Part shown: positions 24,225-58,639 of the stretch, piece by piece
Numbering within the stretch: the stretch's first letter is position 1
Layout of the letters: each line of letters begins with the position of its first letter
Virus record (IMG/VR): IMGVR_UViG_3300030419_004471
Coordinates: 124,001-188,000 of that record
Length of the DNA: 64,000 bases
Strand: one strand, 5' to 3'
Position numbers and translations under genes: made by a program
Notes under the pieces: generated by a model
What the model saw: only the letters and a program-made list of their open reading frames with translations
Told to the model about the DNA's origin: nothing
The model's database searches: none

Positions 24225-24225
24225 C

Positions 24226-34373: not shown

Positions 34374-34822
34374 TAAACTTTTAGTTTAAGTTTTGTTATT
34401 TGTTTCTTCTCTGTTCCGTATTTTTCGCAGATATATTTAATGTGTTCTCTGCCTTCTCTAGTAGAATAAAGTATTTCTAAATATTCATTTGCTTCTTTTT
34501 TTGAACATTCATAATCTACACAAACCAAATCTACTAACCAATCCTCATACTTTTGTGATTTTTTCCCCTTTACATATCTAAGATAATGCCTCCCCTTTGG
34601 TATGATACCAATGTATGCTAAATATAATGCTTTCGGAGGAAGAGCTTGTGTATATGGTTGTAGTTCCGCTATTAAATCAATCCAATCTGGATTCATTGAA
34701 AGAAACCTATGAATCATATAATTTGACCAACTCTTCAAATCTTCGTCCTCTAACTTATCGAAATATTTAGGGTCTTGATATTGTGTTATCGCTTTTATGT
34801 GGTCAAATAATCCTTTAGCCAT
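34373..34822 (-). CDS. 62: clamp-loader small subunit (gp62-like)
   Basis: YMIHRFLSM, SKKEANEYL; adjacent to gp44. Confidence 0.7.
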   Translation of the reverse strand: MAKGLFDHIKAITQYQDPKYFDKLEDEDLKSWSNYMIHRFLSMNPDWIDLIAELQPYTQALPPKALYLAYIGIIPKGRHYLRYVKGKKSQKYEDWLVDLVCVDYECSKKEANEYLEILYSTREGREHIKYICEKYGTEKKQITKLKLKV

Positions 34823-35106: not shown

Positions 35107-36057
35107 TTATTTGTTTATCGTTGATAAAATGTTTAGTATCGTAGCCATAAAGGGTATTTCCTTATCGACTGCTAAAGCATCTCTATGTTGACCTTCTGCT
35201 AATACCAAAATTACTCCACTAACCTTACCTGAAGCATATTCATCTACCTTTTCATAGAGTACTGAATACATTTCTGTAAAATCTTGCATTTTAGAATCCG
35301 CAACCATCTGCCTTATTTTCATATATTTATTCCTACTATCATCTGATGATTTAAGAATATCTAATATTTTAGTTTTGAAATCAGAATCCATCAAATCATT
35401 TTTAGAAAGTTTTAACTCACCCTTAACAGAATTAAGTTGACAAGTATTTATTACTTTTCTTATATCAGGATATGATGAATCTATGATAGGAACTAAATCC
35501 TTTACATCATATTTTATTTCTTCGGAACTAAGTATCTTATCTAATTGTACTGCAACTTCTTTTTTAGAAGGTGGTACAATTTGGAATGTTTGACATCTAC
35601 TTTGAATTGGGTCAATTATCTTCTCAACATAATTACAGGTCAAAATAAACCTACAATGTTTTGAAAATGTTTCCATAAGATTTCTTAATATAGCTTGTGC
35701 ATTTGGAGTCATATAATCAAACTCATCCAATATAACAATCTTATATTTCTTAAATCCTTGTGATGATGCAAAGTTCTTAACTTTATTTCTAACTGTATCT
35801 ACATTGTTTTCATCAGATGCATTTATAATCATATAATCACATTCAATTGATTTAACAATGAGTTTAGCCAAAGTTGTTTTACCAGTACCAGCTTTACCAA
35901 AAAGTAAAAGGTGTGGAACATCTGATGTTTCCAAATATCCTGCAACCTTTTCCTTTAGATGTTCATTACCAACATAATCATCTAATTTTACGGGTCTATA
36001 TTTCTCTACCCATAATGAATTATCTATTGTTTCTTCTGTTTGTTCGAAAAATCCCAT
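35107..36057 (-). CDS. 44: clamp-loader AAA+ subunit (gp44/RFC)
   Basis: WVEKYRP, GKAGTGKT, NASD, LDEFD, SRC. Confidence 0.95.
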   Translation of the reverse strand: MGFFEQTEETIDNSLWVEKYRPVKLDDYVGNEHLKEKVAGYLETSDVPHLLLFGKAGTGKTTLAKLIVKSIECDYMIINASDENNVDTVRNKVKNFASSQGFKKYKIVILDEFDYMTPNAQAILRNLMETFSKHCRFILTCNYVEKIIDPIQSRCQTFQIVPPSKKEVAVQLDKILSSEEIKYDVKDLVPIIDSSYPDIRKVINTCQLNSVKGELKLSKNDLMDSDFKTKILDILKSSDDSRNKYMKIRQMVADSKMQDFTEMYSVLYEKVDEYASGKVSGVILVLAEGQHRDALAVDKEIPFMATILNILSTINK

Positions 36058-36058: not shown

Positions 36059-37279
36059 TTATCTTCCTACTTCTTTTAAATAATTGTTTTTCATTGTTTC
36101 CCAATCCATACCAATAGCATCTATATAAAATAAATGTTCTGGTTTCAATCGATTAGAATCATATAACTTTGTATATCTTTTTATGGCTTGTCTTTTCCAC
36201 CACTTATTAATGTAATCAACTCCCTCTTCAAACTTCTTTTTCATCTTTAAATCTTTTTCTTCAATTTCTGAACGAAGAAATTCTGGTCCGTTTTCATACA
36301 TCATAGCAAGATACACTCCTCTTTTGAATCCGTGATGGTAATCAGCTGCTCTGATACCACATTCTTTAAAGATTCTTCCTAAAATCTTTTGTTTAATACC
36401 ACTAACAGGTCCTTGTCGTTGAGATTCAGCTCCATACATATTAGCTCCGTTTCTTTTTCTTTCTTCTGTAATATGTTCTTTATACCAATCCTCTCTGTTT
36501 TCTTTTAACCATTGGTGCCACGGGTCATAAAATTTATCATCAGGTTTAATTGCTATCTTACCAGCAGATTCCCCTAATGTTTTAAAATGTGGAATACCAT
36601 TATATTGAGAATGAATACCATATAAAGAAGTTGTACCAACACCAATTAGAGTTTGTCCATATTTCTTTTTCCAAAAATCTCTAATTTCAGGTACAGTAGT
36701 CATCATCGCTGTAAGTTTACCACCTAAGAAATTATATCCTAATGGTTGTGTACATACTATCGTAGAAGCGATTGTTGTATAATTTAACTTACCCTTTTTA
36801 AACTTATCTTCTTTATTCCATCCTATGTATTTATCTCTAACACCCATCGATGTAACATCAGATGCTAAAGATATCATACCCAGCAATTTACCACTTTTCT
36901 TATCCTTAACAAAAACTTTAACATTTCTACCAGGGTTAGCTGTCCAACTCATTGTATGAATCATCTTTCTAAGATGTGTCCATTTTGTAGCTTCTTTAGT
37001 ATCTTCTACAATTTCAACGTATGGTTCTAACTCTTCAATTTCTTTTATTGTAAGTTCTTTATCATTAATATCTGTAGGTCTCCATTGCCAATCATAATAA
37101 GATGCTATAGCAGATTTATCTCTAATCATAGAATCTCCTTGCAACTCTACCCACTTTTTATATAAAGTTTGTTCCTCTACAGACATCTGCATAAGATAGT
37201 CCATATTCTCAATGAGCTTTTTCTTCTCATCTTCGAATACAAATTGAGGTTTAGCTGGTTCGGTATCCCAAAAACTCAT
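36059..37279 (-). CDS. DUF4338/Druantia DruA-like protein
   Basis: PGR, RD.YIGW, QPLGYNFLGGKL, TTSLYG..SQYN, G.KRGVY. Confidence 0.72.
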   Translation of the reverse strand: MSFWDTEPAKPQFVFEDEKKKLIENMDYLMQMSVEEQTLYKKWVELQGDSMIRDKSAIASYYDWQWRPTDINDKELTIKEIEELEPYVEIVEDTKEATKWTHLRKMIHTMSWTANPGRNVKVFVKDKKSGKLLGMISLASDVTSMGVRDKYIGWNKEDKFKKGKLNYTTIASTIVCTQPLGYNFLGGKLTAMMTTVPEIRDFWKKKYGQTLIGVGTTSLYGIHSQYNGIPHFKTLGESAGKIAIKPDDKFYDPWHQWLKENREDWYKEHITEERKRNGANMYGAESQRQGPVSGIKQKILGRIFKECGIRAADYHHGFKRGVYLAMMYENGPEFLRSEIEEKDLKMKKKFEEGVDYINKWWKRQAIKRYTKLYDSNRLKPEHLFYIDAIGMDWETMKNNYLKEVGR

Positions 37280-37974
37280 TACTTAATCTCTACTAAATAA
37301 TAATTTGATGTATAATCTCCGTCCTCAAATGAAAGATGTGCTAATCCTTTAGATGAAATTTTTAATGAAGATGATTTTGAACCTTTGTTAGCTATAAGAA
37401 TAGCTTTTAGATATTTAGCTGAAAATGCTATAGGTTTTATATCATTATCACATTTACAATTAACATCAATACTAATTCTATTTGAATTAATTGATGAATA
37501 ACCTAAAATGATTTCACCTTTGTTTTTTGTACAAGTAAAAGTAAATGTATCTGCATCTGCTAATGCTCCTTTTGATTTGATAAATTTATTTACAAACTCA
37601 TCATCTAATGTTACCTCAGAATCAAATTCAGGTAATGCCTTTAAATCAGGTACAGCAGGTATAACAGATGGAGCAGCTAGCATATATTGTACTTTCGTAC
37701 CCTTATCACTAAATTTAAGAGCTCCTGTTACCTCTTCTACTTTTATTGATGAATCTAATACACTTAACAATCCTCTCAATTGAGAAGTTGTATAAATACC
37801 AAATTCACCACTAGGAAACTCACTATCTTTCACAGATACGTTTCCTAATAATGTCTTATCATCAGAAATCATTCTGACTGACATTGAATCATCAGTAGAG
37901 TTCATCATTACTGATTCAACCTCGCCACCGAGATTATATCGATTTATGAACCCATCTAATTTTAATTTTTCCAT
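37279..37974 (-). CDS. 45: DNA sliding clamp (gp45-like)
   Basis: EFGIY motif, PCNA-like two-domain pattern, replisome context. Confidence 0.75.
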   Translation of the reverse strand: MEKLKLDGFINRYNLGGEVESVMMNSTDDSMSVRMISDDKTLLGNVSVKDSEFPSGEFGIYTTSQLRGLLSVLDSSIKVEEVTGALKFSDKGTKVQYMLAAPSVIPAVPDLKALPEFDSEVTLDDEFVNKFIKSKGALADADTFTFTCTKNKGEIILGYSSINSNRISIDVNCKCDNDIKPIAFSAKYLKAILIANKGSKSSSLKISSKGLAHLSFEDGDYTSNYYLVEIK

Positions 37975-38037: not shown

Positions 38038-39084
38038 TTATTTCGTAATTATATTTCCAAAAGTATCCCTCAACCAATCATTAAAATTTTTACCAAATGC
38101 ATCAGTAACCTTATATTTTACTAATGTTTTCATAATATCTAATTTATTGATTGGATTTACTTCTTCATCATATCTATCTAAGATATTCATCTTAATGTTA
38201 CCACTAATATCTGGGTCATGCAATTGCATCAATTCTCTATTCATTAAGATTTGTTCTTTTGAATTTAATATCTCATCATAAATTTTAAGCTTTCCTTTCT
38301 TTTCATCAGCTAATTTTAATAAATCTTCAACTGATATTTTTTTATTTTCTGTAATTTCAGGAAATCTTTTAACTAATGTTTTAATACCACATCCGTGAAC
38401 ACCTGGTATATTATCTGAAGTATCACCATCTAATACTCTAAATAGTAATAAATTTTTAGATTCAATACCATATTCTTCCTTTACCAACTCTTTGTTGTAA
38501 AGTTTCTTTTTGGTAGGAGACCAAACGATGGTCGTATCATCTACTAATTGTAGGAAATCCTTATCAGTAGACATAACCACCGCTTGTTCGTTCTCTTTAA
38601 GAAGTTGGGTACTAATGTACGCCATTACATCATCCGCTTCACAACCATCGTAAATCATTGTTGTAATAGGTAAATAATTTAAGATATCAGCTAACCAAAC
38701 GAATTGTCTCTTCATTGATTCTCTTTCATCTTCTTCATTCATCAAATCAGCATATTGTCTATTGACTCTTAACTTATTTTTTGAACGTTCTGATTTATAC
38801 CCACTAAATCTTTTCTTTCTTTTCTGAGAACCTCCCTTACCATCAAAAACTACAATGACTCTTGTCGGTTGAGTGTTTCTAATCGCATAACCTATTGATT
38901 TCAGAACACCAGTTACACCACCAACGTGGTCACCATCATCATTCATTGTAGGAATGGATGACCAGCATCTGATAAATGTATTTAAACCATCGATAATTAG
39001 AACTCGGTCATTTCGTTTCCTATCGATATTTTGGTCGTGTGCTCTTTCAACCGAATTAAGTATGTCTTTGTAGAGTTTCTTCAT
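38038..39084 (-). CDS. rnh: 5'-3' exonuclease / T4 RNase H-like
   Basis: IIDG, VFDG, YK..R, EADD, STDKDF, GDTSDNIPGV. Confidence 0.92.
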   Translation of the reverse strand: MKKLYKDILNSVERAHDQNIDRKRNDRVLIIDGLNTFIRCWSSIPTMNDDGDHVGGVTGVLKSIGYAIRNTQPTRVIVVFDGKGGSQKRKKRFSGYKSERSKNKLRVNRQYADLMNEEDERESMKRQFVWLADILNYLPITTMIYDGCEADDVMAYISTQLLKENEQAVVMSTDKDFLQLVDDTTIVWSPTKKKLYNKELVKEEYGIESKNLLLFRVLDGDTSDNIPGVHGCGIKTLVKRFPEITENKKISVEDLLKLADEKKGKLKIYDEILNSKEQILMNRELMQLHDPDISGNIKMNILDRYDEEVNPINKLDIMKTLVKYKVTDAFGKNFNDWLRDTFGNIITK

Positions 39085-39317
39085 TAAAGTACTTCTTTTG
39101 TTGTTGAAAAATACTTTTCTAATGTTTCTAATCTCTCATCAGCAGATGCTAATAACTTTAAAGCTTGTGTTGCATTATCCCAAAAATCTTTTGTGGAATG
39201 GTCTCCGATTCCAGCAGGAAAGTTTTTCAGTAAATCCAATGATAACAAAGCTTTGTTCTTATCAGCTTCAGCTTCTGATTTTAACATGTCAAATATTCTT
39301 TTATCTATTTTTGCCAT
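39084..39317 (-). CDS. conserved phage hypothetical protein
   Basis: P.GIGDHS helical hairpin. Confidence 0.6.
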   Translation of the reverse strand: MAKIDKRIFDMLKSEAEADKNKALLSLDLLKNFPAGIGDHSTKDFWDNATQALKLLASADERLETLEKYFSTTKEVL

Positions 39318-39321
39318 AATT

Positions 39322-40443
39322 TTAATCATTTTCACCAGGTAACTCAGTATCTACTTCCATAGCATCTATATCTAATGTATCTGATTTGTATTGAAGTATT
39401 GTTGATTCACATATCTTTTTGTAAATCTGGTCTCTAACTTCTTCTCTATCATCCATCAATTCGATAAAATCCTTAGATTGAAACTTTAGTTCTTCACCAG
39501 TTTCAGTATCTATGTAAGTGTACCAAGCGCCAGCTTGTTTTACTAATTTATTATCTTTCATTACTCGTAACCAAGAACCATAGTTATCAATACCTCTATC
39601 GAAGTAGATTTCAAAATCAGCCGCTCTTAAAGGTGGCCCCATTCGATTCTTTATTACTTGACATCTCACTTTCATACCAACAACCTTATCCAATCCATTC
39701 ACTTTCATTTTGATTTGCCCCATTCCCTTCAATCTCAGTCTAACTGAAGAGTGGAAAGCTAGTGCTTTACCACCTGAAGTAGTCCAAGGGTCACCAAACA
39801 TTGCGTTCATTTTTTGTCTAAGTTGATTAGTAAATACTAATGAAATTTTCTGTCTACCAATCATATTGGTAATCTTTCTCATCGCCTTAGAAATAATAAT
39901 AGCTTTATCTGTAGCATATCCATCTTTATTATAATCAGCTGCTAACTCATTCTTAGTTGAAGCTGCTGCTACTGAATCTACTACGATTGTAACTAATTTA
40001 TCTCTTGAGGTTTGTCTTACCTTTTCAATGATAGTTTCACAATAATCAAAGATTTGTTCAACAGAATCCGCTGATACATAAAGAAGTTTAGAAACATCAA
40101 CACCGATAGCTTCTAAAAATTCTCTACTTACTGCAGTTTCGGTATCAATTAATACAGCTACACCACCTTGCTTTTGTGTTTCAGCAAGACAATGAGCAGA
40201 TACTAATGATTTACCACTCTGTTCCAAACCTGTAATCTCTGTAATTCTACCAACAGGCAACCCACCATATGGGCGATTAGAAATTGCAACATCCAACATA
40301 GCACATCCAGTCGAAATCCAACCCTCAACATTTGTGGGTGCTTCATCCGAATCAAGGAAAAATGCTACCTTCTGGTCTTTCGCTGATTTATTCAGCTCGC
40401 CAGCTAGAATATCTGCTAGTTCTAATTCTTTTTTCTTTGCCAT
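39322..40443 (-). CDS. uvsX: RecA/UvsX recombinase
   Basis: GLEQSGKS, DTE, VDSVAA, TNQLR, GGKALAF. Confidence 0.93.
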   Translation of the reverse strand: MAKKKELELADILAGELNKSAKDQKVAFFLDSDEAPTNVEGWISTGCAMLDVAISNRPYGGLPVGRITEITGLEQSGKSLVSAHCLAETQKQGGVAVLIDTETAVSREFLEAIGVDVSKLLYVSADSVEQIFDYCETIIEKVRQTSRDKLVTIVVDSVAAASTKNELAADYNKDGYATDKAIIISKAMRKITNMIGRQKISLVFTNQLRQKMNAMFGDPWTTSGGKALAFHSSVRLRLKGMGQIKMKVNGLDKVVGMKVRCQVIKNRMGPPLRAADFEIYFDRGIDNYGSWLRVMKDNKLVKQAGAWYTYIDTETGEELKFQSKDFIELMDDREEVRDQIYKKICESTILQYKSDTLDIDAMEVDTELPGEND

Positions 40444-40456
40444 TTAGTTTTTAATA

Positions 40457-41284
40457 TTATTTGTTAAACAAATCATCAAATGCAGCCGCAACATCATCAG
40501 TTTTCTTAGATGTTTTTGGTTTATCATCAGTATCAAATGGTAAATCATCAACTTCTTTTTCTGATTTAACCTCTTTGTTTGATAATGTTTCCTCAGCTAC
40601 TGAAGGTTCACCATCTTCATTTTTATCTGAAGTTGGATTTAACCATCCTTCTAATACTGCTTTTAATTCATCATAAGATAATTCTGAATATAAATCAGTA
40701 ATTTCAGTTTGAGTTTCTAAAAATTTAGTAACATCTTCAGCTTTATCAGATAATGCACTTTGATTTGGTTTAACTCTAATAGTTGTAACAGGATATGAAG
40801 TTCCTGCTTCTTCGGCAGATTGGTATTCTATAGTAATATCTCTACCCGTTTTAGGGTCTGTTATATCACCATAATCTGGGTCTGCTATATATCCAAGAAT
40901 TTCTTGATATACAGTTTTACCGAATCCCCAAAATTTGATTCCTTCTCCTTCTTGTCCTCTCACTAAAATAGGAACGAAAGTTCTTAATTTCGGCTCCATC
41001 TGCTTAGCAGCTTTCCAATCTTCCTTATCACCCATTCTTTTCAATCTATCAGCAAACTCAACTATAGGGTCAGGTCTACCAAATGATTGTGGTGAGAGAT
41101 AAGTTTTATTATTAATGTTGTAGTGAAAATACAATTCGATGAAAGGATTATCTTTTTCGAATTTGTAGGGAACGATTCTGACTTGATGTTTACCAGGTGT
41201 TGGTTTCCATAGATTGTCAGACTTCTTTTGTGTGTTTTGTAGTTTGTTCAGTCTACCTCTGATTGCGTCAATATTAATTGCCAT
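40457..41284 (-). CDS. 32: single-stranded DNA-binding protein (gp32-like)
   Basis: DPI.E, FGKTVY, DITD...GRD, acidic C-terminal tail ending FDDLF. Confidence 0.85.
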   Translation of the reverse strand: MAINIDAIRGRLNKLQNTQKKSDNLWKPTPGKHQVRIVPYKFEKDNPFIELYFHYNINNKTYLSPQSFGRPDPIVEFADRLKRMGDKEDWKAAKQMEPKLRTFVPILVRGQEGEGIKFWGFGKTVYQEILGYIADPDYGDITDPKTGRDITIEYQSAEEAGTSYPVTTIRVKPNQSALSDKAEDVTKFLETQTEITDLYSELSYDELKAVLEGWLNPTSDKNEDGEPSVAEETLSNKEVKSEKEVDDLPFDTDDKPKTSKKTDDVAAAFDDLFNK

Positions 41285-41812: not shown

Positions 41813-44326
41813 TTAAAATGAAAAAAACTTTTCAGCTGTTTTTGTTGAGGATAAAACCTCACCCCATTTCATAGCCCCATAAAAATCCTCTAACTTCTTT
41901 AAAAGTTCTCTTTCAAAGATTTTATCATAATCAATATAGGTCTTTACTAAATCCATAATTTCCTTTGGGTCATCATATCCTTTGAATGCTACTCCATCTA
42001 ATCCCATTGGATTTTGTTTAAGATACACCCATTTAACCTTATCACCATTTTTCATAGGTTCATATTTCATCTCACATTTAAAATGAGATAATAGTTGATT
42101 AAATGCTATAGCTGCTTTTACGTGAGCTGGTGTGCCTGATACAAATTGGAACATTCTGATTTGTTTACCCTTTGGAAGATATTTTGTTAAATTCTTTACA
42201 GATGTATTTTTTGCAATATCTACAACATTCATCTGAGATAAATTATTTTTGAAATCATAAATCTTATCAGTAAGTTCAGTTTCCGTTTTACCTTTTAGAA
42301 TATCAATTAGAACTTCACTCATAAACTTTCTAAATGCCGCTGGATAAGATGACCTAACAACATCTAAGCCCTTTACATCTAATTTATTAACAGATACACC
42401 ATTATCAGATATAATCCATTGTGCGTATCGTTTTTTAGCTATCCAAATACCTGATTTAGAAACATATTCTTTTTTAATCTCAAATCTATGTTTATCAATA
42501 TTGAAAATTCTTTTTGCAAGTATATCATAAAAATCATTTAGATAATCTTGCATTTCTCCTGCTATTCCATTTACGAAACCAGCGATATCATCATCAGAAT
42601 TATCTCTCCAAGTTGGGTTTCTACTATCAAGTAAGGGAGTAGCACTAAAAAAAACGGAATCAGTGTCAATGTATATATTACTATCCAAATCGGGATTACC
42701 CAATTCTTTATTGTACCTGATGTTAGCCATGTCAGCAGTTGACTTAATAACTGTCTGTCCTGTCGTGGTAACAGCGGTAGCATTATCAACATCATAAAAC
42801 CTAAAGGCAGGAAGGCCAAGCACCCCATATAAAGAATTAAGTAGAATTTTTTGTACCAATTGACGTTTTTTATACCATTCATATTTTTCATTATCTCCGC
42901 TTTTTCCATATTGTTTCATTTTATTTTTGAACTCAACTCTTTGATTAAACCAAATATCTAAGATATCAGGTATACAACCAACAGTATCAGTTCTATATAA
43001 TACACCATTAGATGCAACTGAAAATTTTGAATTATCTAAATACTTTTTAAGATTTTCTTTTGTAATCGTATCTTCACCGATTGTATAAGTATCCTTACCA
43101 CCCTTTACAAACTCATTCGCATCCCAATCATTAATCTTACCAATCTTAGTTTCTGGTGAGATATTAATACTCATAATAATAGATGGATATAGAGAAGTTA
43201 AATCTAAATCATAAATCCATTCATATTTTCCAACGATAGGTGCTTTTACATATGCTCCGATAAACTTCTCCTCATTGTTATCTCTTAATGCTTGCATTCT
43301 CTCCTGTCTATCAGCTGGTTTATTTGGTGCTACGATACCTTTTCTTTTCAAATAACATAACAATGCTCCTTCTAAGTATTTTGATGAATAAACAAAATCT
43401 TCGTATGGAACGTGACCTGCATGACAAATACCTCTTGCCGTATCGATGAATTGTAACTTCTTATCCATATCAACTACCAACTCAACATCCACTAAGTTAT
43501 ACTCAATAAACTTCTCTATATCATCTCTAAATAATTGGTCTAAGTTTCCTTGATATTCTACCTTACCTCTACCTAACTCTTTTGATGCAATACTATCTAA
43601 ACGATAATTGTCTAATTCTGTATAAGTAAAGTTTTTGTAAAGTGCTAAATAATCTAAATAAGATACACCAGCCATAAAGAATCTCTTACGATAAGGTGAC
43701 CAGAAACATTCACCGATTGGTGATAATCTATTTGCGTTTCTTTTACCTATAACATTTTTTATTCTATTATAAAGATATGGTGTATCAAAGTAATCTATAT
43801 TCCATCCAGTAACAATAGTTGGATTAATATATTCATATAGTTCTAAATATTTTTCTAATAATTCTGCTTCACTTCTAAATGGTAGTACAATAGCTTTATC
43901 AGTTTTCTTATTTGATAAAACATTATCTTTATCTAAAACCAAAACATAATATTGATTGGTAGCTGAATCATGCAATGCTATAGAAGTAATTTCATTCTTA
44001 GCTTCTTGCATATCAGGTAAACCTGTTTCCATCTCTACCTCAATATCATATGTAAGAGTTATATGCCCTTCTGATGGTAAATCCGAATCAGTATATGTAT
44101 CTACTAAAACTCTAGTCGTTTCTGCAACATCTGATTCAAAAAGATTAGGATTATCTTTATTGAATTTATATATCTTAGTTAACCTATCTCCATACAAAGA
44201 TACACACTCACCATTTTCTGCTTTTTCATATGCATATCTTGTATAAGGGAAAGTTCTGTAACCTAATTTATCATCCCATAAGTGTATGAGATTCTTCTGT
44301 CTTTGGTAATATACGTTTTGGTACAT
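41813..44326 (-). CDS. 43: family B DNA polymerase (gp43-like)
   Basis: DIE exonuclease motif, GWN..FD, DLTSLYPS, KILLNSLYG, YIDTDS, KKRY. Confidence 0.97.
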   Translation of the reverse strand: MYQNVYYQRQKNLIHLWDDKLGYRTFPYTRYAYEKAENGECVSLYGDRLTKIYKFNKDNPNLFESDVAETTRVLVDTYTDSDLPSEGHITLTYDIEVEMETGLPDMQEAKNEITSIALHDSATNQYYVLVLDKDNVLSNKKTDKAIVLPFRSEAELLEKYLELYEYINPTIVTGWNIDYFDTPYLYNRIKNVIGKRNANRLSPIGECFWSPYRKRFFMAGVSYLDYLALYKNFTYTELDNYRLDSIASKELGRGKVEYQGNLDQLFRDDIEKFIEYNLVDVELVVDMDKKLQFIDTARGICHAGHVPYEDFVYSSKYLEGALLCYLKRKGIVAPNKPADRQERMQALRDNNEEKFIGAYVKAPIVGKYEWIYDLDLTSLYPSIIMSINISPETKIGKINDWDANEFVKGGKDTYTIGEDTITKENLKKYLDNSKFSVASNGVLYRTDTVGCIPDILDIWFNQRVEFKNKMKQYGKSGDNEKYEWYKKRQLVQKILLNSLYGVLGLPAFRFYDVDNATAVTTTGQTVIKSTADMANIRYNKELGNPDLDSNIYIDTDSVFFSATPLLDSRNPTWRDNSDDDIAGFVNGIAGEMQDYLNDFYDILAKRIFNIDKHRFEIKKEYVSKSGIWIAKKRYAQWIISDNGVSVNKLDVKGLDVVRSSYPAAFRKFMSEVLIDILKGKTETELTDKIYDFKNNLSQMNVVDIAKNTSVKNLTKYLPKGKQIRMFQFVSGTPAHVKAAIAFNQLLSHFKCEMKYEPMKNGDKVKWVYLKQNPMGLDGVAFKGYDDPKEIMDLVKTYIDYDKIFERELLKKLEDFYGAMKWGEVLSSTKTAEKFFSF
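42571..42909 (-). CDS. candidate overprinted (+1 frame) membrane protein within polB
   Basis: 112 stop-free codons, two to three TM segments, coinciding with atypical synonymous codons in polB. Confidence 0.45.
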   Translation of the reverse strand: MEKAEIMKNMNGIKNVNWYKKFYLILYMGCLAFLPLGFMMLIMLPLLPRQDRQLLSQLLTWLTSGTIKNWVIPIWIVIYTLTLIPFFLVLLPYLIVETQLGEIILMMISLVS

Positions 44327-46047: not shown

Positions 46048-46443
46048 TTATGAAAATTTTATTACATCGAATACTCTTGTGTTGATTTTCTTAGTGCCTT
46101 CAACATTAGTTACTATGATTGAGTTTCTGAATTTATCCCAATCTACTGTAAAAGATTTATCAATTACACCATTATTCTCTTCTTTTATCAGTTCGTTTAA
46201 TGCGTTTATTGTGTACAATGTATTTGATTGTTTTTTTCTATGTACCAATATAGTATCAGATAATGGTTTATCTGGTTTATATTTAGTGTCTATATTATAA
46301 GTTACGAACAACTCTTCTAAATCTGATTTATTTTGAAGAACATAAATGTAGTTATAAACTATATGGTATGTTTCTCTGATGTCTTGAAGTGTTGTTTGTA
46401 ACCTCTCTTTTGTTGTAAAAGTACACAATAGTTGAGTTTTCAT
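46048..46443 (-). CDS. conserved phage hypothetical protein
   Basis: QLLCTF, HRKKQSNTLYTINALN; late motif at 46471-46478. Confidence 0.7.
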   Translation of the reverse strand: MKTQLLCTFTTKERLQTTLQDIRETYHIVYNYIYVLQNKSDLEELFVTYNIDTKYKPDKPLSDTILVHRKKQSNTLYTINALNELIKEENNGVIDKSFTVDWDKFRNSIIVTNVEGTKKINTRVFDVIKFS

Positions 46444-50470: not shown

Positions 50471-51544
50471 TTATACCTTCGAATAATCTTTTATTACCAT
50501 CGCACCATTTATATATGTAAAATCTTCAAACATTTTTTGAAGTTCATAATTAGAAAACTTTTTATGTAATCCGTTATGACATTCATTACATAGAATTTGT
50601 ATATCATTTTCTTCTTCAAACCCCATTCTTTTATAGGTATTATGATGGGCATGATATTCCGATTCTTTTTTTGATGCATCTCCACACATCTGACACTTAC
50701 ATCCTCTTTTTTTAAGTAGATATTTTCTTTTTCTTTTCCAACAACCAGAACCTATGTAGAGAGAATGTTGATTCTCAAATTGCACTTCTGATAAATTAAA
50801 TTTTTCAGAAAAGGGATTCTTCACATCTTCCTTTAATGATAAATCACCATTTAATATTAGATATATTAAATCTCTATTTTGTCGTATTACTCTCAAAGAA
50901 CTATTATCATAAATTGGTGATAAAGCTTTCTGAATAATATTCAAATGTTTATCATTTAAAATACCACCATAGGTTATTGATGAAGAAATCATAGTTCTGG
51001 ACTGAGAGTTGATTTGTTTCCAAACTTTTTTATTTTGTTTAATTTGAATTAACATATTAATCATCTCTTCGTTAAGATAATATTTATAATTTACTTCTGT
51101 TTTTGGAATTTTTCTAACATATGGTTTTGTTTCAAGTGATGTTACTTTGGGTTTTTTAATTCTTGTTATTTTTGTGGGTTTTATTTCTTTAACTTTAGCG
51201 TAAAAGAATCGTGGATTCGATTCATCTAATATATCCATTATACCCTTTATCTTAACTGCTTTTTGAATTGGTTTAAGATGTTTTGAGTTTAGAATTCCTT
51301 TTCTTCTAATAGATTGAGTAATTAATCCTTTTGTATTTGGGTTAACTTTTTTATAATCTTTAGATTGTTTAAATAACTTTAAAAATTCTATTTGTCCAGG
51401 GTTCAATGGATACATTACCCTACCCCTCGACTTTTTCTTTTTCTTTCTTTTGGGTTTTGATTTAGTATTTTTAGTGCGTTTTTTAGAAGGTAGAGTAAGT
51501 TCTCCACTTTTATATTTTTTAAATATAATATCCATTTCACTCAT
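50471..51544 (-). CDS. HNH endonuclease with duplicated N-terminal domain
   Basis: CQMC...AHHNTY...LCNECHNGLH; two GILNxKHL repeats. Confidence 0.75.
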   Translation of the reverse strand: MSEMDIIFKKYKSGELTLPSKKRTKNTKSKPKRKKKKKSRGRVMYPLNPGQIEFLKLFKQSKDYKKVNPNTKGLITQSIRRKGILNSKHLKPIQKAVKIKGIMDILDESNPRFFYAKVKEIKPTKITRIKKPKVTSLETKPYVRKIPKTEVNYKYYLNEEMINMLIQIKQNKKVWKQINSQSRTMISSSITYGGILNDKHLNIIQKALSPIYDNSSLRVIRQNRDLIYLILNGDLSLKEDVKNPFSEKFNLSEVQFENQHSLYIGSGCWKRKRKYLLKKRGCKCQMCGDASKKESEYHAHHNTYKRMGFEEENDIQILCNECHNGLHKKFSNYELQKMFEDFTYINGAMVIKDYSKV

Positions 51545-51547: not shown

Positions 51548-52825
51548 TTAAACTTTCGAATAATCTTTACCAAAGCTCATTCTAGTCGGAAATCCAAAAC
51601 TTTCAATAGTTGATTGAACATCCATTAACCATTGAACATCTTTTGGAGCTTCTTCCGCAAGTTCAAATAAGAATGAATCATATGTATATAAAATCGGTAA
51701 GGGTAAACTCTTTTCCTTCAGCTTTTTCATAACCTCAATATTAAATTCAGTTTCAGTCGCTTGAAGTAGATAATTGAAGTACTTTTGTCCAGTCGGTTGT
51801 TCTATCCAACCTATAGGTATTCTTCTACCTTTTGGGGTTTTGATATAACCATTCTTTATAGCTTCTTCTTGCATCTTTCTAATAAATCTATCAACTTTAT
51901 CAAAGAATGGGATTTTTCTATCTTCATCAGTTACACCACCATAAAGTATTTTAAATGTTCTTCCTTTTGAATCATCATAGGAACATCCATATTGGTCTGC
52001 TAACCATTGGTGAACGGATGTATCGGGTAATTTATACTTAATCATTTTAGCAATAATCCTAACGTGATATGCATCATAATCGAATTGTACAAACTTTTTA
52101 CCTTTTGGGGGAATGAATATCTCTCTACTACCATCACTTTTATTAAGAGCTGAATAATTAATACCCAAATGCCTGTTGGATGGTCTGCTTGTTATTGTAT
52201 ATGGATTGTATTCTGTAAATGTTCGAGAGAACCAAAGTGATTTCTTATTATCTGGCCATCTATCAAGAAATTTTTCCCTATCGACCTGAATCCCCTTTTG
52301 TTCGATTTCTGAAAGAATAGGTATCATAGTATCATCAATCCACGAATTTGTTGATGGAATTAGTAATTGTTGTCTTAATTCATCTAAAATATCCTTTATA
52401 ACCTCTATAAACTTCATTATAGGGATACTTTTACCTAAACTATCTCTTATACCCAAACGAGTGTAAAAGTTCGTTAAATCCTCTATTTTCTCTCCATAAG
52501 GATATAGTTTGTTATTTTCAAAGAAAAGATTTGATTGTATATCCTTAGTATTCTTTATATTTAACTTAGTTTGTAGTAGCCCTTTCTTATTCCATACCCA
52601 TTTTTCTTTTTTTGATTTTGATAAATCTATTTCTAATTTTTCACAATCATTATGATTAAATGGTAAAATAAAATGTAAATTTTCAAATGCTACATATAAA
52701 AAGGATATATCAGAAGTCATTGGATGACGCTCTAAATCCTCCCAAATAGGCATAATTAATGAAGTTTCATTATTCCAATATTCGAGAAATTGTTCTTTTT
52801 CACTATGTGACTCAACAATAATCAT
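51548..52825 (-). CDS. atypical minimal family A DNA polymerase
   Basis: TSRPS, FDYDAYH (motif A), KGRTFKILYG (motif B), NYLLQ, YTYDS (motif C). Confidence 0.78.
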   Translation of the reverse strand: MIIVESHSEKEQFLEYWNNETSLIMPIWEDLERHPMTSDISFLYVAFENLHFILPFNHNDCEKLEIDLSKSKKEKWVWNKKGLLQTKLNIKNTKDIQSNLFFENNKLYPYGEKIEDLTNFYTRLGIRDSLGKSIPIMKFIEVIKDILDELRQQLLIPSTNSWIDDTMIPILSEIEQKGIQVDREKFLDRWPDNKKSLWFSRTFTEYNPYTITSRPSNRHLGINYSALNKSDGSREIFIPPKGKKFVQFDYDAYHVRIIAKMIKYKLPDTSVHQWLADQYGCSYDDSKGRTFKILYGGVTDEDRKIPFFDKVDRFIRKMQEEAIKNGYIKTPKGRRIPIGWIEQPTGQKYFNYLLQATETEFNIEVMKKLKEKSLPLPILYTYDSFLFELAEEAPKDVQWLMDVQSTIESFGFPTRMSFGKDYSKV

Positions 52826-52829
52826 TGTA

Positions 52830-52861
52830 CAAATATACGAAAAATATTTTAATTTTCCAAA
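52830..52861 (-). promoter_or_regulatory. Bacteroidota-type early promoter, probably leaderless
   Basis: TTTGGA...CGTATATTTG ending 4 nt before ATG 52825. Confidence 0.72.
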
Positions 52862-53274
52862 TCTTTTTGAGATATTTTGATAAGTGGGAATATAATTCCA
52901 ACTGTTTTTCTCATTTTAGAATAATTGAAGAAGAATCTTATAGGATATTCTTTTAATGGTTTTACTGTTGCTATAGCAAATGGTTTAGTATCAGCGTGTC
53001 CACCAATAATAATACCCCCACCTAAACTAAATTGTTCGAAATGATATTGTGAATTAACCATAACCTTTCCTTTGTTTAGATTTTCTATTGGAGTCATATA
53101 AGCAATCCCAACTGATACTATTGTATCATACCTTTGATTTAAAGATATTCCAATCATATCGTCTCCTACATTAAGTGCTCTTCCAGTCATAACTCCTACA
53201 GTTGTTTGTGCAAATGTAGTAGTTGATAGCAATAATAATAAAATTATTGCAATTATAATTTTAAAAGTTCTCAT
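52849..53274 (-). CDS. small secreted beta-rich (OMP-like) protein
   Basis: Signal TFA|Q; alternating beta-strands. Confidence 0.5.
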   Translation of the reverse strand: MRTFKIIIAIILLLLLSTTTFAQTTVGVMTGRALNVGDDMIGISLNQRYDTIVSVGIAYMTPIENLNKGKVMVNSQYHFEQFSLGGGIIIGGHADTKPFAIATVKPLKEYPIRFFFNYSKMRKTVGIIFPLIKISQKDLEN

Positions 53275-54170
53275 TTTATAAATGGTAATATTGATAATTC
53301 TTTTGCTTTAGATTCCACCATAACATCCACATCATTACCATAAGTATTTGGTAAAGTATCAATATAATCCGAATGTGCTTGTGGTTTAAGTTTTTCGTTA
53401 CCTTCGTGTAATGATTTAGATTCTGAATAGTGAACAATTGGTTTGATACCTTTAGGCCAAGTAGATATTGCTAACTCTAAAGCTTCTTGCTCTGATAAAT
53501 CACCTGTACAAAATTTGTGGTGATGATAATCAAATACAATAGGGATACCGATTCTTTCGTGTATGTACATCAAATCTTTTACTGAGTACATAGATGCTTT
53601 ATCATCGTTTTCTACAGTCAATCTAGTCTGAACTGATTCTGGTAATCTTTCGAAGTTTTTACAAAACCTATCCATAGCGGATATCTTATCACCATAAACA
53701 CCATTACAATGAATATTGATTTTGTTATAAGGTGAACGTTCTAAACCAATCATATCGAAAACTTCGCCATGTATCCGTAAATCAGTAATAGTTTTTTCTA
53801 CAACACTTTCTCGTGGTGAAACCAATACATTGAATGGACCTGGATGTGAAGTCAAACGTAATCCGTTGTTTTTTGCATAAAACCCACAACCAGCCAATAA
53901 TGTTTTGATTCTTAGGTATTGTGGTAAATCTTCAAATTTGTATTCAGATGCCCAAGGAAAGAACTCTGATGATATTCTGAAACATTTGATTCCATTCTTT
54001 ACATTCCATCTAAGTATCCTACCTAAATCAGCTGCGTTTAACATACCCAACTCACCAGCATAATCCAAACCTCTTTCTTTAAAGGTTCTTTTTATCATAC
54101 TACGATTAGTTGTTATTTTTGGTTTTTGACTAGATAAAGTCATATTGATGCAAGCGTATCCTAAATTCAT
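53271..54170 (-). CDS. uvsE: UV-damage endonuclease
   Basis: LGYACIN, FRISS, HPG.F, ENDD, FDYHHH, HYSE, AHSD, ESKAKE. Confidence 0.95.
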   Translation of the reverse strand: MNLGYACINMTLSSQKPKITTNRSMIKRTFKERGLDYAGELGMLNAADLGRILRWNVKNGIKCFRISSEFFPWASEYKFEDLPQYLRIKTLLAGCGFYAKNNGLRLTSHPGPFNVLVSPRESVVEKTITDLRIHGEVFDMIGLERSPYNKINIHCNGVYGDKISAMDRFCKNFERLPESVQTRLTVENDDKASMYSVKDLMYIHERIGIPIVFDYHHHKFCTGDLSEQEALELAISTWPKGIKPIVHYSESKSLHEGNEKLKPQAHSDYIDTLPNTYGNDVDVMVESKAKELSILPFIK

Positions 54171-54190: not shown

Positions 54191-54222
54191 CAAATATACG
54201 AAAAATTATTGAAATATCCAAG
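54191..54222 (-). promoter_or_regulatory. Bacteroidota-type early promoter
   Basis: TTGGA...CGTATATTTG. Confidence 0.75.
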
Positions 54223-55134: not shown

Positions 55135-55137
55135 ATC

Positions 55138-55169: not shown

Positions 55170-55175
55170 GAAAAT

Positions 55176-55964: not shown

Positions 55965-56321
55965 TTAGTTTTTTGAATATTCCAATAAATTTACTAATCT
56001 ATTTTTTAATTGTGGCATTACTTTCAATTGTTCACCAATACTAGCTTTGTTGGATTTTTTGATTTCTTCTTTAGTTCCAGTAATTCTCCATTTTAAACTT
56101 GCAACTCTAAATAGTGGATTTCCTCTTAGTATCGCAAACCTGTCACTGGATACTTCTGAAATTGGTGATAAATTATCATTTGTTTTTTGTGCAAATCGTC
56201 TTACAATATATCCTCTATTAATATCGTATTTTGAAATTTTAGGAATATGTGGTTTTATCTCAGCTGAAAGCTTTATATTTCTTGATACAGTTAATCCTTT
56301 ATATTGTTCGTTATTATCCAT
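55965..56321 (-). CDS. hypothetical protein of the tail/baseplate module
   Basis: GYIVRRF...WRITG; coupled to the upstream hub-like gene. Confidence 0.6.
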   Translation of the reverse strand: MDNNEQYKGLTVSRNIKLSAEIKPHIPKISKYDINRGYIVRRFAQKTNDNLSPISEVSSDRFAILRGNPLFRVASLKWRITGTKEEIKKSNKASIGEQLKVMPQLKNRLVNLLEYSKN

Positions 56322-58639
56322 TATGCTTTAGGTCTAAATTGCCCCTCTATTGTTGTTTTCCAATTCATACCATCTATCGAATGTTCTACAGATGTAGTAG
56401 TAAATTCTCCGGTTCTAGTATATTTCTCAGGAATACCAGTTATTGTGAATGTATCCCCAAATGCTATACCACTATTACCGTGTATATCAAAATTATATTT
56501 TACTGTTCCCATTAACGGACCTGTTCCTTTGATTGCTTTTCCGTCTGAATCATAATTTGGATTATCTTTTGTTTGATTTTTCTTCCATAACATTTCATCA
56601 TCATATGTTGGGAACATTATTACAGAATCTAAATCTGTAGTATCTAAATCTATATGACCATCTTTTACGGATGGATATGCTCCTATCTTTTCTAAGAAAG
56701 AGTTGTACAAATCAGCTTTATCTTTTTCGGGAATATCACTTTCTACATCCTCCATTGGTTTTGTATCATCTTTATTTACTGCAGCTTTAGCATTATGTAA
56801 ATCTAATACAGAATCTCTAAATGTGGGTTGATTAAATAATGCATTGTTAGTTTCTCTCTCATCCGCATCTCCAGATATATTAGCTGCTCCACCATCGGCA
56901 GCTTTTCTATCAGCTATTATAGAACTTGCCATATCTCCAGGTAAATCTATATCTAATGTACCTCCTAAGAAAAATGATTGTTCACCATTATGTACAAATG
57001 GTGTTGGTGAAGATTCTTCGTGAGTTGTACACGCCATATCAACTACTTGTAGACATCTCTGTCCTTGTTTTAAATCCATTATAGCTTCAGGAGCAGCTGA
57101 TTCTACTATTTCAAACTTCCATAAGTTACCACAAGCTGCTGACATACCATTTAATATTTCCATTAAAACATCTCTATATGTTGTTGATTCTTTTTCTAAT
57201 ACCCCAATGATAAAATCCATATTAACATAAAGATTATCTAAATATCCCCAAGTATTTGCATCTCTAGCTATTGTTCTAAATCCATGCTCTGTAGGTTCTA
57301 ATTGTCTTGAAGCTAAAGCTGTTGGTTCTGGGAATTGTACAGCTATATTTCCTGATTCATCTCTTTGTGCGCAAGGATTCGGTGGATTTTTTTTCTGTTC
57401 TTGTGTTCCTTCACTTATTATTTCAAGAAATCCAAAATCAGGACAATTTTCATTTGGTACTAACAATACATCTTTTTTAGTTGAAAACATACTTTTAAAT
57501 CCACCACAAACTGTCCATTCTGTAAATATTTTTATTGGATAATTATTAGGTCCAACTTGGAATCCCTTTTCTAACATTATTTTATCGTTAGTATCTAATA
57601 CTTTCTTTATTACAGAAAATTTAACAAATCTTTCCGTTCCAATTAAATCCGTACCATTTGGTATTTCTAATTGTGAACCATTTAACTGAACATCATTTGT
57701 GAAAATCCACCAACCACCTTCTGATTCACCACCTAATTTATTTCTAGTTGAAGTATTGAAATTTATATAATTTTCTTCTTTACTAAGTTCACCAGCTAAA
57801 GCTTTTATTGCAGCTGTTTGTTTATGATTTGGTAATGAATTAAAGAAATATCTCCAATTTTTTTCTCCTGCTGTTAGGCTTGATGTACTTTTTTTCCCTA
57901 AGTCAGCATATTTTAAACCTGGTGTTGGTTGTTTCTCTTTAGAATCATCATCATCACCTTTATCAGATGATATAATAGGTTTTGTAGTTTGAATCATTCC
58001 CGGCATATTACCCATACCTTTGATGGTTACATCCAATTTATAAACATCACCATCACTTCCTACTTTAAATCCAGTTATAAATCCTAAAATAGCGTTATAA
58101 TCTCCTTGTGAATCTTTTCTTTTTTTCAAAAGTAAATTGAAATCCATACCCACATTTGCAATAGCTTCTGTATTTAAATCAATTAATTCATTATGAGCTC
58201 TATGTAAATCCCAACCAAACTCAACCAATATAGTATGACCTGGTTCACCAAAATATTTTTGAAGTACATCTACTTGACCACTTGTATATGCATCTATTGT
58301 GAAGTTACATTCTCTAGCTAATCCCCAATCATTATCCTTTAAAGTTAATCCACTAATTGTTGGAGATGGTCTTATTCCTCTATCTTCGCCTTGTACCGTA
58401 ACTGGCTCTCCTGCCCAATTTAATCCAACTACACCAGGAGAATCTGCAGTTCCATAAACCGAACTGGTACTACCAAATAGAGGTAAATCAGGATTTGATT
58501 GTAAAACCAATCCTTCTCCAGAATTACCAATTACTCGTATCCATGCATTTAATCTAGTTGTATAGTGTGCTTCTCTCTTTCTATAAAGATTATCTACAAC
58601 CCATTCTGGTATCGCTCTGTATGCTGGCCATTTGCTCAT
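56321..58639 (-). CDS. baseplate hub-like structural protein
   Basis: PGHTILVEFGW; C-terminal HGNSGI.FGD.F....IP...F....VEHSI....WKT; tail context. Confidence 0.6.
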   Translation of the reverse strand: MSKWPAYRAIPEWVVDNLYRKREAHYTTRLNAWIRVIGNSGEGLVLQSNPDLPLFGSTSSVYGTADSPGVVGLNWAGEPVTVQGEDRGIRPSPTISGLTLKDNDWGLARECNFTIDAYTSGQVDVLQKYFGEPGHTILVEFGWDLHRAHNELIDLNTEAIANVGMDFNLLLKKRKDSQGDYNAILGFITGFKVGSDGDVYKLDVTIKGMGNMPGMIQTTKPIISSDKGDDDDSKEKQPTPGLKYADLGKKSTSSLTAGEKNWRYFFNSLPNHKQTAAIKALAGELSKEENYINFNTSTRNKLGGESEGGWWIFTNDVQLNGSQLEIPNGTDLIGTERFVKFSVIKKVLDTNDKIMLEKGFQVGPNNYPIKIFTEWTVCGGFKSMFSTKKDVLLVPNENCPDFGFLEIISEGTQEQKKNPPNPCAQRDESGNIAVQFPEPTALASRQLEPTEHGFRTIARDANTWGYLDNLYVNMDFIIGVLEKESTTYRDVLMEILNGMSAACGNLWKFEIVESAAPEAIMDLKQGQRCLQVVDMACTTHEESSPTPFVHNGEQSFFLGGTLDIDLPGDMASSIIADRKAADGGAANISGDADERETNNALFNQPTFRDSVLDLHNAKAAVNKDDTKPMEDVESDIPEKDKADLYNSFLEKIGAYPSVKDGHIDLDTTDLDSVIMFPTYDDEMLWKKNQTKDNPNYDSDGKAIKGTGPLMGTVKYNFDIHGNSGIAFGDTFTITGIPEKYTRTGEFTTTSVEHSIDGMNWKTTIEGQFRPKA

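What the first reader, a model, noticed from the sequence alone, without database searches (positions are those of the whole stretch)
51548..52861. Second, minimal PolA with steric-gate substitution alongside a complete PolB replisome
Seen: a 425-aa PolA with motif A DYDAYH (canonical DYSQIE, so the sugar-gate Glu becomes His) and motif C YDS (canonical HDE). The thumb appears largely deleted (GIQVD to TSRPS is only ~30 aa), the N-terminal exonuclease looks degenerate, and it has its own apparently leaderless early promoter near uvsE. Both catalytic Asp residues are retained. Known: this Glu excludes rNTPs in Pol I. Inference: a non-processive enzyme for UvsE-linked gap filling, or one that incorporates rNTPs or modified nucleotides.
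Basis: partly seen in the sequence, partly recalled or inferred. Interest (0 to 1): 0.65.

Follow-up and report, generated by a model that had tools for sequence, protein, structure and literature searches.

The report
Thumbless second PolA (divPolA1) of phage
The gene is a real, well-conserved small DNA polymerase of the published but untested "divPolA1" family, which large phages carry beside their main polymerase; what is new here is that its odd active-site residues are the family's signature.

Summary
ORF 51548..52825 (-) encodes a 425-aa family A polymerase with motif A DYDAYHVR (His in place of the Klenow E710 sugar gate) and motif C YDS. About 78 thumb residues are missing and the exonuclease domain is degenerate. 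A recurrent sigma70-like promoter motif ends 6 nt before its ATG. A PolB, clamp, clamp loader, gp32-like SSB, DnaB and DnaG-type primase are encoded in the same 213.6-kb phage genome.

It is not new in kind. It belongs to divPolA1 (Virol J 2024;21:200), a divergent PolA with truncated thumb and dead exonuclease, found in 155-190 kb phages beside a regular polymerase.

What I add:
- The family is large: 923 clusters at 50% identity.
- It is under purifying selection (median dN/dS 0.18).
- The unusual residues are its signature: His gate in 135/136, Tyr-Asp of motif C in 136/136, Ser/Ala/Gly after the Asp, and Tyr for Klenow R754 in 112/136.
- The fold is Klenow-like (Z 20-23), not RNA-polymerase-like (Z about 11).
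- The conserved gene order is p772-p118-divPolA1-p131-SSB-RecA-FEN-DnaB.

UvdE, the HNH gene and PolB are local insertions, so the UvdE link is not supported. The most likely role is a distributive, non-proofreading DNA polymerase of the replication-recombination module. Altered sugar selectivity remains untested.

The parts
51548..52825 (-). divPolA1-type family A DNA polymerase gene, 425 aa
   Evidence: ORF. Pfam PF00476 at 29.2 bits, below the 34.3 cut-off. phrog_17 at 1.9e-15. AF2 pLDDT 96.6. Z 20-23 to PolA DNA polymerases. Shares 22 invariant columns with the published divPolA1 of phage immuto.
52292..52825 (-). N-terminal degenerate 3'-5' exonuclease-like domain (residues 1-178)
   Evidence: DEDD-fold matches at Z 10-12 over model residues 1-178. 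The canonical acidic catalytic set is not conserved in the family. PMC11348598 reports all three catalytic Asp replaced in divPolA1.
52193..52291 (-). Thumb stub (residues 179-211), where Klenow has about 110 residues
   Evidence: The equivalent segment is 20-40 residues in all 136 family members.
52058..52081 (-). Motif A DYDAYHVR: catalytic D249, His254 at the Klenow E710 sugar-gate position
   Evidence: D is 136/136 and H is 135/136.
51938..51979 (-). Motif B / O-helix YDDSKGRTFKILYG: K287, F291 and Y295 kept; Tyr283 replaces Klenow R754
51674..51691 (-). Motif C LYTYDS: Y382 for H881, catalytic D383, S384 for E883
   Evidence: Y and D are 136/136; position 384 is S 111, A 22, G 3.
52832..52860 (-). 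Sigma70-like promoter motif TTGGAA-17-TATATT; the -10 ends 6 nt before the ATG, so the mRNA would be leaderless or nearly so
   Evidence: 9 copies in the window, all on the minus strand, 0.18 expected. Before this gene it is kept only in relative L015.
46048..46443 (-). p131, a conserved small protein of unknown function that directly follows divPolA1 in distant phages
   Evidence: In the phage collection it occurs only in the 6 records that hold divPolA1. Its fold is not informative.
55965..58639 (-). p772 and p118, genes that precede divPolA1 directly in diverse relatives
   Evidence: L003, L037, L038, L040-L043. No family match.
38038..41284 (-). gp32-like SSB (40457..41284), RecA (39322..40443) and 5'-3' exonuclease/FEN (38038..39084): the conserved downstream part of the module
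33012..34373 (-). DnaB-type helicase, the end of the conserved module
41813..44326 (-). Regular family B DNA polymerase (837 aa), here inserted between p131 and p114
   Evidence: It is not in that place in 33 relatives and lies 26 kb from divPolA1 in relative G001.
50471..51544 (-). HNH endonuclease gene 3 nt downstream of the polymerase; a local insertion
   Evidence: Absent from all related loci.
53271..54170 (-). UvdE UV-damage endonuclease with its own copy of the promoter motif; a local neighbour, not a conserved one

Best explanation
The gene encodes a member of the divPolA1 family. This is a Klenow-fold family A polymerase that has lost its thumb and its proofreading site but keeps a complete, remodelled polymerase active site.

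It is most likely an active, DNA-templated, non-proofreading and distributive DNA polymerase. I propose that it serves the phage's replication-recombination module (SSB, RecA, 5'-3' exonuclease/FEN, DnaB) with short-patch synthesis: filling gaps at Okazaki-fragment junctions after FEN action and/or extending RecA-made recombination intermediates. PolB with its clamp would do bulk synthesis.

Shown: family membership, fold, thumb loss, conservation of the active site, purifying selection, conserved gene order.
Inferred: that it is catalytically active, that it uses dNTPs, that it is distributive, and the short-patch role.
For: Membership: tblastn 1e-25 to the immuto protein annotated 'DNA polymerase family A', phmmer 9e-33, and 22 shared invariant columns including the His gate and the motif C Tyr-Asp. 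The family description is in PMC11348598.

Fold: AF2 pLDDT 96.6. Z 20-23 over 392-415 residues to Pol I, DpoZ and Pol nu. Z 10.9-11.7 to mitochondrial and T7 RNA polymerases. Foldseek's top 50 are all DNA polymerases.

Active site kept in 136 clusters of no more than 50% identity: R214, D249, K287, Q355 and D383 in 136/136; F291 in 132; Y295 in 134; H272 (=Klenow H734) in 122.

Selection: median dN/dS 0.18 and no stops. 923 clusters at 50% identity.

Context: the order divPolA1-p131-SSB-RecA-FEN-DnaB is seen in immuto, Mel-JY01, LR756508, L038 and L041, and in expanded form in 33 closer loci.

A DnaG-type primase and a PolB with clamp and clamp loader are present, so neither priming nor bulk synthesis needs this enzyme.
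Against: - No biochemistry exists for any member.
- Four residues that matter in Klenow are changed (E710H, R754Y, H881Y, E883S). From established Klenow mutagenesis, loss of E883 or R754 lowers activity strongly, so the chemistry or substrate may differ.
- The authors of PMC11348598 read the conserved context as suggesting a role in replication proper.
- T4-type replisomes manage Okazaki maturation without a second polymerase.
- The proposed partnership with FEN or RecA rests on gene order only.
Confidence: 0.5

Rival explanations
1. Altered nucleotide selectivity: the His gate together with the Tyr-Asp-Ser motif C lets the enzyme insert rNTPs or sugar- or base-modified nucleotides. It might, for example, lay down short RNA-containing or modified patches.
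For: - The Glu-to-His change is nearly invariant (135/136), so it is selected.
- E883 is replaced by Ser/Ala/Gly and R754 by Tyr.
- From memory, T7-type RNA polymerases have His-Asp-Ser in motif C.
- The genome is rich in sugar-modifying genes, and p114 has a weak match to a 'nucleotide modification associated domain'.
Against: - His is as bulky as Glu and may still block a 2'-OH.
- The Klenow F762 position is Phe in 132/136. RNA polymerases use Tyr there (established knowledge).
- The structure is much closer to DNA polymerases (Z 20-23 against about 11).
- Family members occur in phages with different regular polymerases and no shared modification genes were shown.
Confidence: 0.17
2. It is the true replicative polymerase of these phages. 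Accessory proteins such as p131 would replace the thumb, and the 'regular' PolB would be auxiliary.
For: - It stands at the head of the conserved replication module, while the regular polymerase is swapped among families A, B and C and sits in variable contexts (PMC11348598).
- PolB lies at different places in this genome and in G001.
- p131 co-occurs strictly with the polymerase in the phage collection.
Against: - It has no proofreading and no thumb.
- The complex prediction with p131 gave no verdict (not evidence either way).
- This genome encodes a clamp and clamp loader of the kind that serve PolB.
- A 213-kb genome copied by an exonuclease-free enzyme would carry a heavy mutation load.
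Confidence: 0.12
3. It is a UvdE-coupled repair polymerase that fills the gap after UvdE nicks at UV lesions.
For: UvdE lies two genes upstream in this window. Both genes carry the same promoter motif.
Against: - UvdE is absent from the 10-kb flanks of all 33 related loci.
- It lies 133 kb away in the complete relative G001.
- It is missing from immuto and Mel-JY01, which keep the polymerase.
Confidence: 0.05
4. It is a non-catalytic remnant kept as a DNA-binding or scaffold subunit of the replisome.
For: Several residues important in Klenow are changed (R754Y, E883S). The thumb and exonuclease activity are lost.
Against: Both metal-binding Asp, the general-acid Lys, the O-helix Phe/Tyr, and the minor-groove Arg and Gln are invariant or nearly so in 136 diverse clusters. 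That pattern is not expected of a mere scaffold.
Confidence: 0.08

Closest known systems
divPolA1 (Virol J 2024;21:200, PMC11348598), e.g. [quoted passage not shown]
   Same: - Klenow fold with truncated thumb, inactivated exonuclease and conserved palm Asp residues.
- About 410-470 aa.
- Encoded in large phages beside a regular polymerase.
- Heads the SSB-RecA-FEN-DnaB module.
- Same His gate and Tyr-Asp-(Ser/Ala) motif C.
   Different: - Only 24-29% identical to the members available for comparison here (immuto, named in the paper; Mel-JY01 and LR756508, not in its list).
- Belongs to a marine clade not among the 14 phages of the paper.
- Here the module is split by three insertions: PhyH to UvdE; HNH, radical SAM, nuclease and p674; p168, GT and PolB.
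- The gene has its own promoter motif.
[quoted passage not shown]
   Same: Fold (Z 22.9, 415 residues aligned). Equivalents of D705, D882, K758, F762, Y766, R668, Q849 and H734 are kept.
   Different: - About 78 thumb residues missing.
- Exonuclease site lost.
- E710H, R754Y, H881Y, E883S.
- The 5' nuclease is a separate gene.
- Pfam score is below the family cut-off.
divPolA2 of barbaviruses (same paper)
   Same: A second, divergent, thumbless PolA beside a replicative PolB.
   Different: By the paper's description, divPolA2 lacks the exonuclease domain, has an unrelated N-terminal domain, sits in variable contexts and matches RNA polymerases at Z about 12. The protein here keeps the exonuclease fold and matches DNA polymerases far better than RNA polymerases.
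CCPol-MP of staphylococcal SCCmec elements (as cited in PMC10201439)
   Same: A truncated PolA that works with a small partner protein and a helicase. Here too a small conserved protein (p131) and a DnaB gene accompany the polymerase.
   Different: - CCPol lacks most of the exonuclease domain and acts as a primase.
- These phages have a DnaG-type primase.
- No interaction with p131 could be supported.
T7-type single-subunit RNA polymerases
   Same: Common palm and fingers ancestry. A small residue follows the motif C Asp (His-Asp-Ser in T7, from memory).
   Different: - Z only 10.9-11.7.
- No promoter-recognition domains.
- Phe, not Tyr, at the sugar-selecting O-helix position.
- His, not Gly, at the gate.

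Membership tests
divPolA1 | Significant sequence similarity to a published member (phage immuto protein) | tested here: met
   tblastn 1e-25, 29% identity over residues 120-389. phmmer 9e-33. 22 invariant columns shared in alignment A3.
divPolA1 | PolA fold with truncated thumb | tested here: met
   Z 20-23 to PolA structures. 33 residues where Klenow has about 110. The segment is 20-40 residues in all 136 family members.
divPolA1 | 3'-5' exonuclease domain present but catalytic acidic residues replaced | tested here: inconclusive
   The fold is kept (Z 10-12 to DEDD nucleases). No conserved DxE / NxxxD / YxxxD set appears in family columns 1-150. Residue-by-residue equivalence to Klenow was judged by eye only, because HMMER did not align this domain. 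This protein itself has D30-L-E32, which is not conserved in the family.
divPolA1 | Palm catalytic residues conserved | tested here: met
   D249 and D383 are 136/136 and align to D705 and D882.
divPolA1 | Encoded in a large phage genome that also has a regular family A, B or C polymerase | tested here: met
   213.6-kb complete virus record. PolB at 41813..44326.
divPolA1 | Conserved downstream replication genes (SSB, RecA, 5'-3' exonuclease, DnaB) | tested here: met
   Same order in the window, with insertions between the genes.
Canonical Pol I / T7-type PolA DNA polymerases | Pfam DNA_pol_A above its gathering score | tested here: not met
   29.2 bits against a cut-off of 34.3.
Canonical Pol I / T7-type PolA DNA polymerases | Glu sugar gate in motif A, His-Asp-Glu motif C, Arg at the start of the O-helix | tested here: not met
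   The three positions hold His254, Tyr-Asp-Ser at 382-384, and Tyr283.
Single-subunit RNA polymerases | Structure closer to RNA polymerases than to DNA polymerases; Tyr at the O-helix sugar-selecting position | tested here: not met
   Z 10.9-11.7 against 20-23. Phe291 in 132/136.
PolA-type primase (CCPol-MP) | Stands in for a missing primase and binds a small partner | tested here: not met
   A DnaG-type primase is present in this genome and in three reference phages. The partner test gave no verdict.

The most novel reading that the evidence does not exclude
divPolA1 is a widespread phage polymerase with a re-engineered nucleotide pocket: His gate, Tyr for the phosphate-binding Arg, Ser for the third carboxylate. 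Its sugar or nucleotide selectivity would differ from every studied PolA. It would work as a two-part enzyme with the strictly co-occurring small protein p131 taking over the role of the lost thumb. This would be a second, specialised polymerase system common to a large clade of marine and freshwater phages.
Probability: 0.15. Interest if true: 0.7.

Novelty: new member of a known kind. Interest (0 to 1): 0.4.

Why it matters
The sugar-gate Glu is one of the most constant residues of family A DNA polymerases. Here a natural family of several hundred sequence clusters, abundant in ocean metagenomes, has fixed His there, together with three other changes in the pocket, while losing thumb and proofreading.

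The family has only been described by computation. A cultivable carrier exists (Flavobacterium phage immuto), and the protein is small and folds with high confidence, so its substrate choice and role can be tested directly.

For annotation, the result says three things:
- Such genes should be called divPolA1-type accessory polymerases, not broken polA genes.
- UvdE next to this one is incidental.
- p131 deserves attention as a possible partner.

Tried and rejected
One copy lies 4 nt before the ATG, but only 4 of 252 genes have one within 30 nt. I dropped it. The real recurrent motif is TTGGA-N18-TATATT.
- Primase role. Dropped because a DnaG-type primase (Zn ribbon, DnaG_N, Toprim) is encoded in this genome and in immuto, Mel-JY01 and LR756508.
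- Fragment of a PolA gene split by the HNH insertion. Rejected because the protein aligns end to end with Klenow residues 330-927 and with same-length relatives that lack the HNH gene.
- Complex prediction of divPolA1 with p131. No verdict (score 0.01 against a mark of 0.32), so it is not evidence either way.
- p131 function. Nothing usable from Pfam or PHROGs or from the protein atlas. Its model (pLDDT 92.8) matches only generic ferredoxin/ACT-like folds at Z 6 or less.
- p118 and p772. No family match, and only one weak phage hit each.
- PDB search with the single sequence found nothing. A family profile was needed.
- The search for related loci with the 136-sequence alignment failed for lack of a conserved stretch. 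The single protein worked.
- Expression. No RNA run was listed for the region.

Full report
**What is there.** The window is bases 124001-188000 of a 213,601-bp virus record rated 100% complete. About 252 of 254 predicted genes lie on the minus strand. ORF 51548..52825 (-) encodes 425 aa. Its sequence matches are weak:
- Pfam DNA_pol_A at 29.2 bits, below the 34.3 cut-off.
- phrog_17 'DNA polymerase' at 1.9e-15.
- No PDB match with the single sequence.

A profile of 136 relatives matches Klenow at 6.6e-13 and gives a residue-level alignment. In it D249=D705, H254=E710, R256=R712, Y283=R754, K287=K758, F291=F762, Y295=Y766, Q355=Q849, Y382=H881, D383=D882 and S384=E883. Klenow chain residues about 236-312, the thumb, have no counterpart.

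**Structure.** The AlphaFold2 model is very confident (pLDDT 96.6, pTM 0.94).
- Between the helix ending at residue 177 and the TSRPS strand it has only a short helix and a hairpin.
- An all-against-representatives structural search gives Z 20-23 with 392-415 aligned residues. The matches are M. smegmatis Pol1, Klenow, DpoZ, Aquifex Pol I, phage G20c Pol I, Pol nu and T7 DNA polymerase.
- Single-subunit RNA polymerases score only Z 10.9-11.7.
- Residues 1-178 match DEDD exonucleases at Z 10-12.
- Foldseek's top 50 are all DNA polymerases.

So this is a Klenow-type exonuclease-plus-polymerase fold without a thumb.

**A second polymerase beside a full replisome.** The window encodes:
- PolB, 837 aa, at 41813..44326.
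- A sliding clamp at 37279..37974.
- Both clamp-loader subunits at 35107..36057 and 34373..34822.
- A gp32-like SSB at 40457..41284.
- RecA, a 5'-3' exonuclease and a DnaB helicase.

A DnaG-type primase lies at genome position about 40.3-41.1 kb. No other PolA is present.

**The family is known.** Virol J 2024;21:200 (PMC11348598) describes 'divPolA1' in 14 phages of 155-190 kb: Flavobacterium phage immuto, GOV bins and uncultured phages.
- These phages also encode a regular polymerase of family A, B or C.
- The thumb is truncated, the exonuclease is inactivated, and the palm residues are kept.
- A conserved set of replication genes lies downstream.
- The description is computational only, and only that paper and its preprint use the name.
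- The parts of the text I read (section 13 and the passages naming divPolA1) do not mention the His gate or the altered motif C.

The window's protein hits the immuto protein at 1e-25. In a joint alignment with the immuto, Mel-JY01 and LR756508 proteins it shares 22 invariant columns, including H254, Y382 and D383. I therefore file it as a member.

**What the family looks like at scale.**
- The word search found 2203 proteins.
- The exhaustive search of 50%-identity representatives found 923 clusters at E no more than 1e-3 and 359 at E no more than 1e-30. Almost all are 409-470 aa and align end to end.
- In 136 such clusters (alignment A1) the signature is fixed:
  - R214, D249, K287, Q355, E358, Y382 and D383 in 136/136.
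  - H254 in 135.
  - Y295 in 134 and F291 in 132.
  - H272 in 122.
  - Y283 in 112.
  - Position 384 is Ser in 111, Ala in 22 and Gly in 3.
- The thumb-equivalent segment is 20-40 residues in every member.
- Among 26 closely related genes the median dN/dS is 0.18 and none has an internal stop.

The His gate and the Tyr-Asp-Ser motif are therefore selected family characters, not decay.

**Context.** In distant carriers the order is p772-p118-divPolA1-p131-SSB-RecA-FEN-DnaB. This holds in immuto, Mel-JY01, LR756508, L037, L038 and L040-L043 where the contigs reach. In 33 closer IMG/VR loci (58-77% identity) the order is PhyH-like ... divPolA1 - secreted non-specific nuclease ... p131 - p114 - SSB - RecA - FEN.

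In this window three blocks interrupt the ancestral order:
- PhyH, PIG-L, an M78-like gene, UvdE and a 141-aa signal-peptide protein, before the polymerase.
- HNH, radical SAM, the nuclease and p674, after it.
- p168, a glycosyltransferase and PolB, between p131 and p114.

UvdE, HNH and PolB are not within 10 kb of the gene in any of the 33 relatives. In the complete 276-kb relative G001, PolB is 26 kb and UvdE 133 kb from the polymerase. Immuto and Mel-JY01 have no UvdE. The UvdE link is therefore incidental.

**p131.** In the phage collection p131 occurs in exactly the six records that hold the polymerase. It is better conserved than the polymerase (42-50% against 26-31% identity). Its function stays unknown, and a complex prediction gave no verdict.

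**Promoter.** My first test used the wrong motif. K-mer enrichment upstream of genes then revealed TTTTTCGTATATT. This is the -10 half of a bipartite site, TTGGA-N18-TATATT.
- It has 9 copies in the window, all on the coding strand, against 0.18 expected.
- About 25 copies occur genome-wide, nearly all 5-37 nt before an ATG.
- One copy lies at 52860..52832, with its -10 ending 6 nt before the polymerase ATG, so a leaderless or near-leaderless transcript is plausible.
- UvdE has its own copy.
- Among relatives only L015 keeps this site before the polymerase. Elsewhere the gene abuts the upstream gene.

That the site is 'early' is an inference from its sigma70-like form. No RNA data could be found.

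**How it probably works.** Shown: a complete set of polymerase residues for metal binding (D249, D383), for the general acid and phosphate contacts (K287, H272), for the nascent base pair (F291, Y295) and for minor-groove reading (R214, Q355).

From established work on Klenow, removing the thumb tip lowers DNA affinity and processivity, and loss of the exonuclease removes proofreading.

I therefore infer a distributive, error-tolerant DNA polymerase. Three facts point to short-patch synthesis at Okazaki junctions or recombination intermediates:
- Its constant place beside SSB, RecA, FEN and DnaB.
- The variable identity and location of the regular polymerase.
- The presence of a primase and a clamp-dependent PolB.

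Together with the separately encoded 5' nuclease it would amount to a split Pol I. This role is inferred, not shown.

The four pocket changes (E710H, R754Y, H881Y, E883S) keep open that sugar or nucleotide choice differs. The Phe at the F762 position and the DNA-polymerase-like fold argue for dNTPs.

**Verdict.** The gene is a new member of a known, purely computational family. The family-wide His gate, the size of the family and the p131 companion are modest additions.

Noticed in passing
window 5909-5937, 26899-26927, 28817-28845, 38008-38036, 41783-41811, 45994-46022, 52832-52860, 54193-54221, 55140-55168 (all minus strand): A phage-wide bipartite promoter-like motif, (tcc)TTGGA-N18-TATATT with the core TTTTTCGTATATT. 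It has 9 copies in the window against 0.18 expected, and about 25 in the genome, nearly all 5-37 nt before a start codon. It marks the transcription units of UvdE, divPolA1, p168, p114, the clamp and others.
   Followed up: partly
window 46048-46443 (-): p131 is a 131-aa protein with invariant stretches (TQLLCTF, HRKKxxNTLYTINALN) and at least 7992 homologues. It lies next to divPolA1 in distant phages. In the phage collection it is present only in the six records that carry divPolA1. It folds confidently but matches only generic ferredoxin-like folds.
   Followed up: partly
window 50471-51544 (-): A free-standing HNH endonuclease gene (357 aa, Lys-rich N-terminus) starts 3 nt after the polymerase stop codon. 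It is absent from all 33 related loci, so it looks like a mobile homing-endonuclease insertion.
   Followed up: partly
window 41813-45972 (-): PolB, a glycosyltransferase and p168 sit between p131 and p114. In several relatives those two genes are adjacent. In the complete relative G001, PolB is 26 kb away. This fits the polymerase mobility described in PMC11348598.
   Followed up: partly
window 36059-37279 (-): A protein matching the Druantia defence protein DruA (Pfam PF14236, 2.4e-20) is encoded inside the phage replication module, between the clamp and the clamp loader.
   Followed up: no
window 48538-49170 (-) and 52849-53274 (-): Two phage proteins have N-terminal signal-peptide-like sequences. 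One is a DNA/RNA non-specific endonuclease (PF01223, 8e-29) that is conserved just downstream of divPolA1 in close relatives. The other is a 141-aa protein without a family match.
   Followed up: no
window 41416-41760 (-): p114 is conserved just before the SSB gene in relatives. It has a sub-threshold match to DUF1599, 'nucleotide modification associated domain 1' (2.4e-4), and matches phrog_1485.
   Followed up: no
window about 13500-25600 and 44326-45456, 49220-50458, 54613-55931 (-): The window holds many sugar- and small-molecule-modifying genes: a DegT-type aminotransferase, a HAD-nucleotidyltransferase fusion, several GT4 glycosyltransferases, a radical SAM enzyme, a PIG-L deacetylase and a PhyH dioxygenase. 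They suggest glycan or DNA modification.
   Followed up: no
whole genome G000 (213,601 bp): About 252 of 254 predicted genes lie on one strand, with a uniformly negative GC skew across the window.
   Followed up: no
window 55965-58639 (-); L003, L037, L038, L040-L043: A large protein (772 to about 1140 aa) and a small one (107-148 aa), neither with any family match, directly precede divPolA1 in diverse relatives, often with overlapping stop and start codons. In L041 a T4-type baseplate gene lies further upstream, so they may close the structural module.
   Followed up: partly
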